From the NCBI GenBank assembly GCA_028534125.1, contig CM052839.1, positions 45,260,001-45,324,000 on the forward strand: a stretch of DNA of 64,000 nt, given 5' to 3'. The stretch is from Lama glama (lineage: Eukaryota). Below, in pieces: positions 7,082 through 28,700 of the stretch. The translations under genes and the position numbers were made by a program. Positions within the stretch are counted from its first letter, which is position 1, and the number at the start of each line of letters is the position of its first letter. A model generated the notes under the pieces. The model ran no database searches, had not been told where the DNA came from, and worked only from the letters and a program-made list of their open reading frames with translations.

Positions 7082-7581
7082 NNNNNNNNNNNNNNNNNNN
7101 NNNNNNNNNNNNNNNNNNNNNNNNNNNNNNNNNNNNNNNNNNNNNNNNNNNNNNNNNNNNNNNNNNNNNNNNNNNNNNNNNNNNNNNNNNNNNNNNNNNN
7201 NNNNNNNNNNNNNNNNNNNNNNNNNNNNNNNNNNNNNNNNNNNNNNNNNNNNNNNNNNNNNNNNNNNNNNNNNNNNNNNNNNNNNNNNNNNNNNNNNNNN
7301 NNNNNNNNNNNNNNNNNNNNNNNNNNNNNNNNNNNNNNNNNNNNNNNNNNNNNNNNNNNNNNNNNNNNNNNNNNNNNNNNNNNNNNNNNNNNNNNNNNNN
7401 NNNNNNNNNNNNNNNNNNNNNNNNNNNNNNNNNNNNNNNNNNNNNNNNNNNNNNNNNNNNNNNNNNNNNNNNNNNNNNNNNNNNNNNNNNNNNNNNNNNN
7501 NNNNNNNNNNNNNNNNNNNNNNNNNNNNNNNNNNNNNNNNNNNNNNNNNNNNNNNNNNNNNNNNNNNNNNNNNNNNNNNNN
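7082..7581. other. Assembly gap (500 N)
   Basis: Run of exactly 500 N. Confidence 1.
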
Positions 7582-24972: not shown

Positions 24973-25213
24973 GGTGGCTGGTCTCATCACGGGATGGGCC
25001 GTCCACTGAGCCTGCCTGGCTGGCTGCCTGCCTGCACCAAGGCCTCAGTGGGCAAGGGGAAGAGGCCAGGGGGAGGGCGAGGCTGACCGCAGACCCCTGA
25101 GGGGAACCACTCTTTGATGGGACATGGGGGCTGTAGGCACTGGGGACAGGACAAAGTTGGGGGGTCCTGGGAGCATGGGCCAGGGACTCTGCTGGTGGCC
25201 CAGGCTGACGAGG

Positions 25214-25765
25214 TCACGAGTTTAAGAAGGCGAAAGCCGACGGCTCCGAGCCAGACGGTTCTTTGGCTGCCATCCTCTGAGACGACATCCAGGGGGCCTG
25301 GCAGGGCTCCCCCACAGCAGGCCCGGCCCCCACCAGGCGGGGACAGGCCACCAGCTCCATGCCAGCAAATAAGGAGTGGGAGCTGCCGCTGGGGCCCGGG
25401 CCCAGCTCTGGCCCCCACTGTCGGGTGTCCATGCCCACTGGGCCCCGCTCAGATCCAGGCCCCTGCTCTGTGGAAGCTGCCAGTCTGGTTTCAGCCTCCA
25501 CAGCATCCCCAGGGGCTGGAAGCAGGCAGCTGTCCAGGGGGGTGGGAGACACAGGGCCAGGATGCAGCCCTGATGGGGGAGCAGTGCTCCTGGGTGTGAA
25601 CAGAGCTGAACTCAGAGGCTGCAGGAAGGCCTGGTCCCCGGCTAAAGGCAGGGCATCGGTCAGCAGGTCTGATGGGCCCACATGTGCAGCTGTGGGGCCA
25701 GGCTCAGCTGGGGGCTTCCGGGCAGGAGGCCACTGTCGGCAGGAGGCTTCAAAGTGTCTCAGGAT
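25214..25765 (-). CDS. TEPSIN: TEPSIN last coding exon (uses L1-derived acceptor)
   Basis: ILRHFEASC...SLFAGMELVACPRLV...EPSAFAFLNS*; TGA at 25214-25216. Confidence 0.9.
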   Translation of the reverse strand: MLRHFEASCRQWPPARKPPAEPGPTAAHVGPSDLLTDALPLAGDQAFLQPLSSALFTPRSTAPPSGLHPGPVSPTPLDSCLLPAPGDAVEAETRLAASTEQGPGSERGPVGMDTRQWGPELGPGPSGSSHSLFAGMELVACPRLVGAGPAVGEPCQAPWMSSQRMAAKEPSGSEPSAFAFLNS

Positions 25766-28700
25766 CTATACAGGACAGAAATAGACTCATGGACAGAGAA
25801 TACAGACTTGTGGTTACCAGGGGGGCAGAGGGTGGGAAGGGATAGACTGGGATTTCAAAATTGTAGAATAGATAAACAAGATTACACTGTATAGCACAGG
25901 GAAATATACACAGAATGTTATGATAAATCACAGAGAAAAAAATGTGACAATGAGTGTGTGTATGTCCATGAATGACTGAAAAATTGTGCTGAGCACTGCA
26001 ATTTGACACAACACTGTAAAATGATTATAAATCAATAACAAATGTTAAAAAAAAAGTGTTTCAGGATCTGGATGAGGGAAGAAAAGGGGCATCGGTGAGG
26101 CTTCTGTGCTCCGCAGGAATCGCGGACGGCTTGGCCCTCCCCGCACCAGTGCCTGCCTCAGTGCCGCCGCCCAGAGCAGGGGAGGGCCGGCCAGCTGCTC
26201 CCACCCGTTCTCCTGTAGTCCCACCCTGGGGAGCAGCAGCGCTGGGGAGGACAGTTAGGGACAGGTGACTAAGGAGCTGAATTTTCAGCCACCACAGAGG
26301 AAACGGGAAGCCAACAGCGGGTGAAGGGGCCAGGGCCTGGCTGCTGCCTAGAGGCCCCGAGGAAGATCCTGGGCTGCTCCCCAACACTTGTCAGCGGAAA
26401 GAGAACTCAGACACACAGAGCCACTTCCGTCTTCCAGGAGCTGGGGACCTGGAAGCAGAGCTCAGACCCATGAGCTGTGACACAGCGGAGAACAGAGGAA
26501 TAGATCCATCCAAGCAGCCAAGGAGGGCTTCCTGCAGGAAGCCGTGTGTAAGATGAGTCATGAGGGGGACGGCGTTGCCCAAAGGACAGAGCTGCTAGGC
26601 AGCGGGGAGGGCAAGCGTGGGGTCCCAGGAATGGGAAGACACCAGGCCCCCAACTGCTGCTCCAGGGGCAGCAGGCAGGAAAGGGAGGGTCTGTGAGCGG
26701 CGCTGGGGCCTGGGGGCTGGGGATCGGGGCGGGGGCGGCGCTCCGCCACTCACCTTGGTGGCCTTGTTGGTCACGGGTCCGGGGCGGCCCGTACTGAGCT
26801 CCTGCAGCCGCGGCCGGGCGAGCAGCAGGACGCGCTCCTGGGAGAGCAGGTCGGTGCAGCCGAGGGAGGCGATGGCCCCCAGGGCTCTCTGCGGGGCAGG
26901 CCTGCGGTCAGCAAGGGCCCTCACGGGAGTCCTGTGCTCACCCCCCACCTGTCTCCAGGGCAGGACACCCCCCGCCCCGCGGCGGCCGCCCTCACCATCT
27001 GCTCGTGCTCGCCAGTCCCGCCCAGGTGGCGGATCAGCAGCTCCAGCACAGCCTCACAGTTGAGGAGTCCACACCTGCACGGGGGCACCTGGGCAGTGGG
27101 ACAGGGGCCAGGTGGGGGCGCAGAGCTGGGGCAAGGGCGGGGGGTGCAGGGGTGGGGTCCTGGAGTGGCGGGGTGGGGGGCTCACTCTTTGACGAAGCGC
27201 TGCTCCTCCTCTCGGCTCAAGAAGGCGTGCGGCCCCCGAGTCACAGCCCGGACCAGGCTCAGCTCCTGCTGGTAGTCACCCGGGGTCATGGCCTCGACCC
27301 TGTAGGAGACATGCAGGTCAGGACAGAGCAGGGTGCCTCCCCGACCGGTGGGATCCTGGAGCTGGGATGGGGGGGTTGCCCTGGGCCCAGGCTCACCTTT
27401 CTGCCAGGTCACTGGGCGCCCGGCTGGTAACTGAGGGGCTGTCGCTGCCCGACCAACTGCTGGAGTCTGAGGCCCCGCCCAGGGCGCCATCCTCCTGGGA
27501 GGAGCTCTGAGAGCTGGGGCTGCTGTCCAGCTCATCCCAGCCGCCCCCGGCCTGCCCAGGCTGGCGTCTCACTGCTGGGGGAGACAGTGACCGAGGGTAA
27601 GGCCCTCTGGGGCCTCAGGCTGGCCTCGTGTCCGCCTCCCCAGGATCCTAGAACAGAGAGATGCAGGAAAGGCCTGGGGTCTGGGTCCTGAGATGTGGAC
27701 GGGGCGGCCACCTGGGCTCCAGCTCTAGGACACACCAGGTGAGGGGAGATGGGGGCAGAGAGGAGCACATCCTTCCAGGGGACCTGCCCCGCCCGGAAGA
27801 CGCAGGAAGCCGTGTCAGGAACCAGGGCCAGGCGGGGGCTGGATGTGCAGAGCAGCAGGGACACTGCCAGCACAGTGGCTCTCAAATCCTGGTGAGTCCT
27901 GACACCCTTCCTTTGAGCCATGAAAATGACGGCAGCTGCTGAGTGAGGTGGAGGTGGAGGTCACGGACAGCTATCTGGCCGTCCTCTCCCCCAGTGCACC
28001 AGAACACACGTGCCCCAGAGCCTGGTCCTCCTCGGGCGTCCCTGCCGTCCCGCACAGCCACCCAAACGTGTCGAATGCATGGACGAGGGCTGGGGCTGGG
28101 TTCTTGTCCCAGCTCAACCCTAGTCCTGCATCTGAACAGCTGGGACCTGGATAGGACCCACCCCTGGTGGGGCCGTTACACTGAAGCTCCCACCCAGAGC
28201 AGATGGACAGAGACATTGGACAGCGCAGGGACAAGGTATGGTTGGTCTGGATGCAGCCACCACAGAGGCCACGTGGAACTCATCACCTGGGCGGCTGGCT
28301 CTGAGTTCTGAGAGGTGGTGTGGGACAGGAGGGCGGGGCCTGTACACCACCCCACCACAGGTGAGCTGCTTTCTTCCTCCTCCATCTGCTCCCACCCAGC
28401 CAGCAGGTGACAGAAGCCCGGGGCCCTGGGAGGGGAAGCCAGACCCCACTGTGGGAGGGGTGTCACTTGATACCTCGGGCGCCCAGGCCGGCTGCGGGGA
28501 GTGGGTTCCCAGGAGTGGGGGGGCTGAGGCTGGCTGGAGGTGTCACGGCTGGCTGGTAGGCGTTACCCCGCGGCAGGGGCCTCTGGGTGCTGGGGCTCTC
28601 AGGCCCAGGGCGCACAGCGCTGGCCACCACCTCTGCGGCCTTCTGGATGGTGGACAGGAAGGCTTCACCTGCAGAGCCTGCACCAGAGGGAGAGGGGACA

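What the first reader, a model, noticed from the sequence alone, without database searches (positions are those of the whole stretch)
25751..26095. L1 insertion duplicated the last-exon splice acceptor of TEPSIN; the L1 itself provides the rescuing 3' splice site
Seen in sequence: a ~285-bp L1 3' fragment (25768-26052, poly(A) on plus, antisense to TEPSIN) is flanked by a 17-bp TSD, aaagtgt(c/t)tcaggatct (25751-25767 and 26053-26069). On the gene strand the TSD is AG plus the first 15 nt of the exon. The upstream, apparently ancestral acceptor (ctcac branch-like site, ccccttttcttccctcatccAG, AG at 26068-26069) now reads ILKHFFFNICY-stop into the L1 poly(T). The downstream copy (ttctctgtccatgagtctatttctgtcctgtatAG, AG at 25766-25767) draws its entire pyrimidine tract from antisense L1 and gives the intact 183-aa exon. 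The single TSD mismatch keeps the conserved Arg of ILRHF in the downstream copy and changes it to Lys upstream, consistent with selection on the L1-derived acceptor. Established knowledge: the tepsin C-terminus carries the AP-4 beta4-ear motif LFxG[ML]x[LV] (here LFAGMELV, 25349-25372) and the epsilon-ear motif S[AV]F[SA]FLN (25217-25240). Inference: this is either a lineage-specific splice-site exaptation that shifted the intron end by ~300 nt, or a switch making a truncated tepsin (ENTH+tVHS only, unable to bind AP-4) that would escape EJC-dependent NMD because the stop is in the last exon.
Basis: partly seen in the sequence, partly recalled or inferred. Interest (0 to 1): 0.88.

Follow-up and report, generated by a model that had tools for sequence, protein, structure and literature searches.

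The report
Retro-insert duplicated TEPSIN's last splice acceptor
In a camelid (alpaca-like) genome a 285-base retrotransposed fragment landed exactly on the splice acceptor of the last exon of the trafficking gene TEPSIN and duplicated it. This is a real and tidy natural experiment in splice-site choice of an already known kind, but which copy the cell uses could not be measured here.

Summary
A 285-bp A-rich segment ending in a short A run (25768-26052) is flanked by a 17-nt direct repeat (16/17), unique in the window. On the gene strand the repeat is AG plus the first 15 exon bases. A pig contig and read-through ORFs from deer, bats and a mustelid show an empty site. So this is a camelid-lineage insertion on the 3' splice site of TEPSIN's last exon.

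- The upstream, ancestral acceptor is intact and looks stronger by sequence. It gives a stop after 11 codons.
- The exon-adjacent copy has only insert sequence upstream.
- Indirect evidence favours use of the exon-adjacent copy. All 8 alpaca and 13 Camelus protein models join ...ATK|ILRHFEASC. The 183-codon exon is intact. Alpaca-lineage changes are few.
- No junction reads were obtained.
- L1 identity rests on hallmarks and memory, because no repeat library was available.
- The single repeat mismatch has no statistical weight.
- The age within camelids is unresolved.

The closest known case is the canine merle PMEL SINE. I file this as a new member of a known kind, of moderate interest.

The parts
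25217..25765 (-). TEPSIN last coding exon, 183 codons, from ILRHFEASC to SAFAFLNS. The stop codon is at 25216-25214. The exon carries the two AP-4 ear-binding motifs.
   Evidence: Translation. dN/dS against pig is 0.38.
25751..25767 (+). Target-site duplication copy 1. On the gene strand it is the exon-adjacent AG (25767-25766) plus the first 15 exon bases. It keeps the ancestral Arg codon AGA.
   Evidence: Pig has the same AGA.
25768..26046 (+). Body of the retro-insert. It is L1-3'-end-like, sense on the + strand and antisense to TEPSIN. Its reverse complement supplies the whole tract upstream of the exon-adjacent AG.
   Evidence: It is absent from the pig contig, which shows a 302-nt gap. 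It is 42% A on the + strand. AATAAC lies at 26034. No other copy is in the window. The family was not tested against a repeat library.
26047..26052 (+). Short poly(A) tail of the insert. The A run continues to 26055 into the duplication. On the gene strand it reads as a T9 run placed 16-24 nt after the upstream AG.
26053..26069 (+). Target-site duplication copy 2. On the gene strand it is the ancestral AG (26069-26068) plus 15 duplicated exon bases with one G-to-A change (Arg to Lys). Splicing here reads ILKHFFFNICY then stop at 26034-26032.
26070..26099 (-). Ancestral polypyrimidine tract (95% pyrimidine) and a CTCAC branch-like motif (26099-26095, A at 26096, 28 nt from the AG). Both are conserved in pig.
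26754..26888 (-). Penultimate TEPSIN exon, 45 codons ending ...VTNKATK. The donor GT is at 26753-26752 and the phase is 0.
26014..26015 (-). Cryptic AG inside the insert, just after the T-rich stretch (ttttacag|TGTTGT; the exon would start at 26013). It scores 6.2 bits, is out of frame and meets an early stop. It corresponds to the cryptic acceptor of the merle SINE.
   Evidence: Comparison with PMC7349775.

Best explanation
A 5'-truncated, polyadenylated retro-insert of 285 bp was integrated by target-primed reverse transcription exactly on the 3' splice site of TEPSIN's last exon. It resembles an L1 3' end and lies antisense to the gene. This happened in the camelid lineage, after its split from pigs, ruminants and whales.

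The staggered cut duplicated AG plus 15 exon bases. As a result the ancestral branch site, pyrimidine tract and AG now sit 302 nt upstream and open a dead-end frame of 11 codons and a stop. That stop is in the last exon, so the transcript should escape nonsense-mediated decay. The true exon is preceded by a second AG whose tract is antisense insert sequence.

Most likely the exon-adjacent, insert-fed acceptor is the productive and main site, so that full-length tepsin with both AP-4-binding motifs is still made. The intact ancestral acceptor probably also yields some truncated transcript.

Shown here: the insertion, its exact geometry, the empty site in outgroups and the intact, constrained exon. 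Inferred: which acceptor is used, L1 family membership and fixation.
For: **Geometry and non-chance repeat:**

**Empty site**
- The pig contig L001 is 172 of 174 aa identical to pig tepsin. Its intron end abuts the exon directly, and the alignment gap is 302 nt.
- Read-through ORFs from a cervid, bats, a mustelid and others all show a translated pyrimidine tract plus CAG directly before ILRHFEASC.
- The window's upstream flank is homologous to those intron ends.

**Use of the downstream site (indirect)**
- 8 alpaca and 13 Camelus protein models all join ATK|ILRHFEASC. None carries the ILKHFFFNICY tail.
- The exon has 183 intact codons with both motifs.
- Polarised by outgroups, about 2 amino-acid changes fall on the alpaca lineage and about 5 on the Camelus lineage.
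- dN/dS against pig is 0.38 with dS 0.46. A neutral exon should therefore have gained many more changes since the camel-alpaca split.
- The 14 RNA runs listed as holding part of the stretch, from 5 studies, hold at most 0.30 of the sampled words. Exonic words would amount to 0.40 with the downstream acceptor and 0.58 with the upstream one.
- The insert-fed acceptor scores 6.7 bits, within the 6.4-9.6 range of three other TEPSIN acceptors.

**Insert present in independent reads**
- Four likely-DNA runs (library type not recorded) from two samples hold 0.88-0.89 of the words. The ceiling is 0.82 if every word touching the insert were missing.
Against: - No junction read was seen.
- The ancestral acceptor is unchanged up to +15. 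It is stronger by the approximate matrix (9.3 against 6.7 bits, 95% against 70% pyrimidine), keeps its CTCAC branch motif and is transcribed first.
- The insert-fed acceptor has no yUnAy motif within 80 nt, and an AG lies 20 nt upstream of it.
- Protein models can be driven by homology. I could not verify that the annotated alpaca assemblies carry the insert. The window differs from each alpaca annotation at one residue.
- A truncated model would probably fall outside the clusters and lists I could see.
- The word-share arguments are arithmetic on coded runs of unknown species.
Confidence: 0.6

Rival explanations
1. Both acceptors are used at substantial levels. The duplicated pair then acts as an alternative 3' splice-site switch. 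It makes full-length tepsin and also a stable truncated tepsin (ENTH plus tVHS plus 11 foreign residues) that cannot bind the AP-4 ears.
For: - The ancestral acceptor is intact and the strongest AG in the interval.
- The stop lies in the last exon, so by the established exon-junction rule the transcript should escape nonsense-mediated decay.
- In the merle allele, acceptor choice at such an insertion is graded rather than all-or-none (PMC7349775).
Against: - None of the 21 camelid protein models seen has the truncated tail.
- RNA contigs hold no more words than the true exon can supply.
- No reads are available to quantify either form.
Confidence: 0.22
2. The ancestral upstream acceptor dominates. 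The insertion is then a truncating, hypomorphic allele, and the downstream exon is intact only because the insertion is recent.
For: - Sequence-based strength and position favour the upstream site.
- The repeat copies differ at only 1 of 17 positions, so a young age cannot be excluded.
Against: - The tail has shrunk to a pure A6-A9 run and the repeat already carries one substitution. This argues against a very recent event (inference).
- Alpaca-lineage protein change in the exon is low.
- All models are full-length.
- Likely-DNA runs from two samples appear to carry the insert.
Confidence: 0.08
3. The insert is a rare polymorphism or an assembly peculiarity of this haplotype rather than a fixed feature. 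Its consequences for the species would then be negligible.
For: - The window's tepsin differs at one residue from each alpaca annotation (W/R and G/D), so it is a distinct haplotype.
- Presence of the insert in the annotated assemblies was not checked.
Against: - A perfect retro-insertion signature (tail, 17-nt duplication, endonuclease-like target) is not what misassembly produces.
- Runs X15-X18, from two samples, hold more words than is possible without the insert.
Confidence: 0.07

Closest known systems
Canine merle allele: SINE insertion at the intron 10 / exon 11 boundary of PMEL (PMC7349775)
   Same: - A retroelement in reverse orientation sits exactly on a 3' splice site.
- A 15-bp target-site duplication contains the original acceptor.
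- The tail reads as a T tract on the gene strand, and a cryptic acceptor lies just beyond it.
- With a short tail, splicing at the exon-adjacent original site gives normal protein.
   Different: - Here the element is an L1-like 3' fragment, not a tRNA-derived SINE.
- The exon is the terminal one, so the aberrant product is a truncated protein that escapes decay rather than an insertion.
- The T run is only 9 nt.
- The allele appears to be the normal state of the genome rather than a coat-colour variant.
- Splicing outcomes have not been measured here.
Antisense Alu/L1 exonization and its repression (PMC2176070, PMC3629564, PMC6108849)
   Same: - Antisense retroelement sequence supplies pyrimidine tracts and AGs that the spliceosome can use.
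- U-tract and LINE-binding proteins (hnRNP C, MATR3/PTBP1) are known to repress such sites. This could modulate either acceptor here.
   Different: - No new exon is created.
- The element lengthens the intron by 302 nt and replaces the tract of a pre-existing, conserved exon.
- No binding data exist for this locus.
Disease-causing L1-endonuclease-dependent insertions near splice sites, e.g. in NF1 (PMC3219598)
   Same: A target-primed insertion with a duplication at or near an acceptor alters splicing.
   Different: Those insertions are de novo and pathogenic, typically causing exon skipping. This one seems tolerated and is probably old.

Membership tests
L1 (LINE-1) 5'-truncated insertion by target-primed reverse transcription | Flanking target-site duplication of about 7-20 bp | tested here: met
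   A 17-nt repeat, 16 of 17 identical, unique in the window with 0 expected by chance.
L1 (LINE-1) 5'-truncated insertion by target-primed reverse transcription | 3' poly(A) tail abutting the downstream duplication | tested here: met
   The A run at 26047-26055 directly precedes GTGT of the repeat. It is short: 6 As plus 3 shared with the repeat.
L1 (LINE-1) 5'-truncated insertion by target-primed reverse transcription | Empty site in outgroup species | tested here: met
   Pig contig L001. Read-through ORFs of a cervid, bats, a mustelid and others.
L1 (LINE-1) 5'-truncated insertion by target-primed reverse transcription | Endonuclease-type target (TT/AAAA-like) at the insertion point | tested here: inconclusive
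   The pre-integration site reads ...CTTC/AAAGTG... on the insert's sense strand. That matches 4 of the 6 consensus positions. The consensus is recalled from established knowledge.
L1 (LINE-1) 5'-truncated insertion by target-primed reverse transcription | Sequence homology to an L1 3' end | not testable with these tools
   - No repeat library is on hand.
- No second copy in the window.
- Blank or chance-only results in viral and genome contigs, the protein atlas, Pfam, papers and earlier findings.
- The resemblance to laurasiatherian L1 3' ends is from memory only.
TEPSIN (AP-4 accessory protein) orthologue | All coding exons present and collinear with tepsin | tested here: met
   Hippopotamus tepsin maps exon by exon across 34607-25217 on the minus strand. 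The last two exons are 100% identical to the alpaca models.
TEPSIN (AP-4 accessory protein) orthologue | ENTH and tepsin VHS-like domains | tested here: met
   Precomputed PF01417 and/or PF25827 are listed for the camelid proteins (both for P0145, PF25827 alone for P0146). These proteins match the window's exons.
TEPSIN (AP-4 accessory protein) orthologue | [quoted passage not shown] | tested here: met
   Both motifs were seen in the translation and are conserved across 15 mammals. Their role is stated in PMC6627992. The exact motif patterns are recalled, because the primary papers are not held.
Merle-type allele (antisense retroelement on a 3' splice site with the acceptor inside the duplication) | Reverse orientation, and a duplication that contains the acceptor AG | tested here: met
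   compared with PMC7349775.
Merle-type allele (antisense retroelement on a 3' splice site with the acceptor inside the duplication) | Splicing at the exon-adjacent copy when the T tract is short; shift to a cryptic site when it is long | not testable with these tools
Only protein models speak for the exon-adjacent site.
Exapted transposable-element-derived constitutive 3' splice site | Tract and branch region of the used acceptor lie in element sequence | tested here: inconclusive
   True by geometry if 25767-25766 is the AG that is used, since all 285 nt upstream of it are insert. Its use itself is not shown.
Exapted transposable-element-derived constitutive 3' splice site | Fixed in the species or lineage | tested here: inconclusive
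   Likely-DNA runs (library type not recorded) from two samples hold 0.88-0.89 of the words, against a ceiling of 0.82 without the insert.

The most novel reading that the evidence does not exclude
The duplicated acceptor pair is a lineage-specific, regulated switch. In some tissues camelids would splice to the intact ancestral acceptor. That would make a stable, decay-immune tepsin consisting only of the ENTH and tVHS domains. Freed from AP-4, such a protein could act independently or as a competitor, while the insert-fed acceptor maintains the canonical protein.
Probability: 0.2. Interest if true: 0.6.

Novelty: new member of a known kind. Interest (0 to 1): 0.4.

Why it matters
- **A clean natural competition experiment.** The same AG and the same first 15 exon bases occur twice. 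One copy sits behind the ancestral branch site and tract. The other sits behind foreign, antisense retroelement sequence.
- **If the foreign-fed copy wins.** That would show how completely a conserved gene's terminal 3' splice site can be re-founded on transposon sequence. It would also give splice predictors and exon-definition models a hard test case.
- **If both copies are used.** Camelids would then carry a natural tepsin isoform that lacks both AP-4-binding motifs. That bears on what tepsin's folded domains do on their own.
- **Limits.** It is not a new kind of event. The merle PMEL allele and many element-derived splice sites are known.

Tried and rejected

There is therefore no read evidence.
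- One exception must be declared: a local tblastn inside run_python used the unmasked window as its database. From then on, my local copy is masked there.

**L1 identity: nothing usable**
- blastn of the insert against the window: no other copy.
- Viral contigs pattern search: 0 matches.
- Genome contigs pattern search: 90 stretches, about the number expected by chance for a 16-mer. None extends beyond about 26 nt when compared by blastn.
- Protein atlas, Pfam on the sense frames, sequence strings in papers and earlier findings by sequence: all blank.

**Protein alignments**
- Alignments of one full-length tepsin with many separate exon rows were misaligned and discarded (A2 and A4). Only A3 was used.
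- I never joined exons into a spliced model. A search for the predicted truncated isoform as a joined sequence was therefore left out.

**Other**
- P0009 looked human and was not compared or searched further.
- RNA folding of the 401-nt interval gave z = -0.77, so nothing suggests that structure hides the upstream acceptor.
- The idea that the Arg/Lys mismatch shows selection is rejected as untestable, because it is a single event.
- Use of the ancestral branch point with the downstream AG is rejected. They are about 330 nt apart with many AGs in between.
Full report
**1. What is in the sequence**

The + strand carries a 17-nt direct repeat at 25751-25767 and 26053-26069, identical at 16 of 17 positions. 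These are its only two occurrences in the 64-kb window at up to two mismatches, and none is expected from 100 shuffles.

The 285 bp between the copies (25768-26052) are 42% A on the + strand. They end in an A run at 26047-26055 that merges with the AAA that starts the repeat, and a variant signal AATAAC lies at 26034.

On the minus strand, which is the gene strand, each repeat copy is AG followed by 15 bases, ATCCTGA(G/A)ACACTTT. The penultimate exon is 26888-26754 (…VTNKATK). Its donor GT is at 26753-26752 and the phase is 0.
- Splicing to the upstream AG (26069-26068) reads ILKHFFFNICY and a TGA at 26034-26032.
- Splicing to the downstream AG (25767-25766) opens an uninterrupted 183-codon exon, 25765-25217, ending …SAFAFLNS.

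**2. The gene and the species**

Hippopotamus tepsin maps exon by exon to 34607-25217 on the minus strand. The window's last two exons are 100% identical to eight Vicugna pacos tepsin models and 95% identical to Camelus models.

Elsewhere the window differs from the older alpaca models at one residue (G for D) and from the newest models at another (W for R). It is therefore an alpaca or very close Lamini haplotype, not demonstrably one of the annotated assemblies.

A review confirms two points (PMC6627992). Tepsin needs AP-4 for membrane recruitment, and two C-terminal motifs bind the epsilon and beta4 appendages. The primary papers are not held, so the exact motif patterns are recalled knowledge.

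**3. It is an insertion, and it is camelid-specific**

A protein-guided scan of metagenome contigs returned one locus, L001. Its last-exon translation matches pig tepsin at 172 of 174 residues, so it is suid host DNA.

In L001 the intron end (…cctcaccgacaccccttcttcctgtgtccag) abuts ATCCTGAGACACTTTGAAGC directly. Aligned with the window, it shows one 302-nt gap, which is the insert plus one repeat copy. The pig intron end is homologous to the window's upstream flank, down to a CTCAC branch-like motif 27-29 nt from the AG.

ORFs called on genomic contigs of other mammals read through the intron end, and they give independent support. Seven of them show a translated pyrimidine tract plus Q (CAG) immediately before ILRHFEASC. 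Their nearest named relatives are a cervid, several bats and a mustelid. The window's upstream flank translates to …KPHRCPFSSLIQ|ILK…, which resembles the cervid …KSPHQFPSSLVQ|ILR….

So the upstream copy is the ancestral acceptor. The pre-integration site was …CTTC/AAAGTGTCTCAGGATCT/GG…, and the event happened after Tylopoda split from other artiodactyls. Pig has AGA at the variable position, so the upstream copy is the one that mutated.

**4. Is it L1?**

The hallmarks of L1-mediated retrotransposition are present: a 17-bp duplication, a terminal A run, a TC/AAAG target close to TT/AAAA, 5' truncation and an A-rich sense strand. From memory the sequence resembles laurasiatherian L1 3' ends.

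I could not test this. No repeat library is available, and every substitute came back blank. 'Retro-insert' is shown. 'L1' is a well-founded guess.

**5. Which acceptor is used?**

This is the crux, and it could not be measured. What remains is indirect.

For the exon-adjacent, insert-fed acceptor:
- All 8 alpaca and 13 Camelus protein models retrieved join ATK|ILRHFEASC and run to the normal C-terminus. None contains the ILKHF… tail.
- The exon is intact with both motifs.
- Polarised by 12 outgroups, about 2 amino-acid changes fall on the alpaca lineage and about 5 on the Camelus lineage.
- With dS = 0.46 and dN/dS = 0.38 against pig, a neutrally drifting exon should have collected many more changes since the camel-alpaca split.
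- The 14 RNA runs listed as holding part of the stretch, from 5 studies, hold at most 0.30 of the sampled 31-mers of 25150-26900. Purely exonic words would be 0.40 with the downstream acceptor and 0.58 with the upstream one.

Against it:
- The ancestral acceptor is untouched up to +15.
- The insert-fed site gets 6.7 bits and 70% pyrimidines.
- Three other TEPSIN acceptors score 6.4-9.6, and the pig site 7.9.
- The insert-fed site has no yUnAy motif within 80 nt, only a GTAAC at 49 nt. AGs lie 41 and 20 nt upstream of it.
- A further cryptic acceptor follows the T-rich stretch, with the exon starting at 26013 (6.2 bits).
- RNA folding gives no reason to think the upstream site is hidden (z = -0.77).

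Known repressors of U tracts and antisense LINEs (PMC3629564, PMC6108849) could tip the balance. That is conjecture.

Two caveats apply. Protein models can be homology-driven. I also could not confirm that the annotated assemblies carry the insert.

**6. Is the insert real DNA, and how old is it?**

Four likely-DNA runs (library type not recorded) from two samples of one study hold 0.88-0.89 of the words. The ceiling would be 0.82 if all words touching the insert were missing. The insert is therefore present in reads-derived contigs, although one of those samples may be the assembly's own source.

One difference in 17 nt and a tail shrunk to A6-A9 suggest an event that is not recent, but the error bars run from under 1 to tens of millions of years.

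**7. Comparison with what is known**

The closest described case is the canine merle allele (PMC7349775).
- A reverse-oriented SINE sits on the PMEL intron 10 / exon 11 boundary.
- A 15-bp duplication contains the original acceptor.
- A T tract is followed by a cryptic acceptor.
- Splicing at the exon-adjacent site is normal when the tail is short.

The present locus has the same architecture with an L1-like fragment, a terminal exon and a 9-nt T run. Antisense L1 and Alu sequences that provide splice sites are also well known (PMC2176070 and others). I therefore file this as a new member of a known kind.

**8. Verdict**

Best reading (0.6): a tolerated camelid insertion whose exon-adjacent, insert-fed acceptor makes normal tepsin, with some truncated by-product likely. 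A true two-isoform switch (0.22), a truncating allele (0.08) and a non-fixed variant (0.07) remain open. Interest is about 0.4.

**Procedural notes**
- Exons were searched one by one by reference and never joined.
- P0009 looked human and was set aside.
- Places 25322-25377 were kept out of all search tools. The one lapse was a local BLAST database.

Noticed in passing
window 27572-27576 (minus strand): There is a tandem NAGNAG acceptor (cagcag) at the exon that starts …(A)VRRQPGQ. Alpaca models and dromedary P0145 read GARAVRRQ, whereas dromedary isoform X2 (P0147) reads GARVRRQ. Both AGs therefore appear in annotated camelid isoforms.
   Followed up: partly
window 27453-27455 (minus strand): The codon TGG (Trp) in …SDSSSWSGSDS matches the older alpaca models. 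The newest alpaca models and all Camelus models have Arg. This is a CpG-type C/T difference and is probably a polymorphism within alpaca. Conversely, the window has Gly where the older models have Asp (PCPGYLF).
   Followed up: partly
L001 (ERZ794959 NODE-1600, 1404 nt): A contig in a public metagenome assembly is mammalian host DNA. It holds the last exon and intron end of suid TEPSIN, 172 of 174 aa identical to pig.
   Followed up: yes
window 7082-7581: A 500-N assembly gap. I did not examine it.
   Followed up: no
window 25749-26009 and 26045-26224 (minus strand): Mechanical ORFs of 86 and 59 aa span the two insert junctions. Exact look-ups of them could reveal the insertion in other assemblies. 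I did not try this, because their GTG starts cannot be given by reference as Met.
   Followed up: no
proteins P0106, P0128, P0164, P0147 (deer and dromedary tepsin models): Several annotated artiodactyl tepsin isoforms are 30-80 aa longer than the canonical form and contain intron-like read-through segments. Automatic models at this gene should be treated with caution.
   Followed up: no
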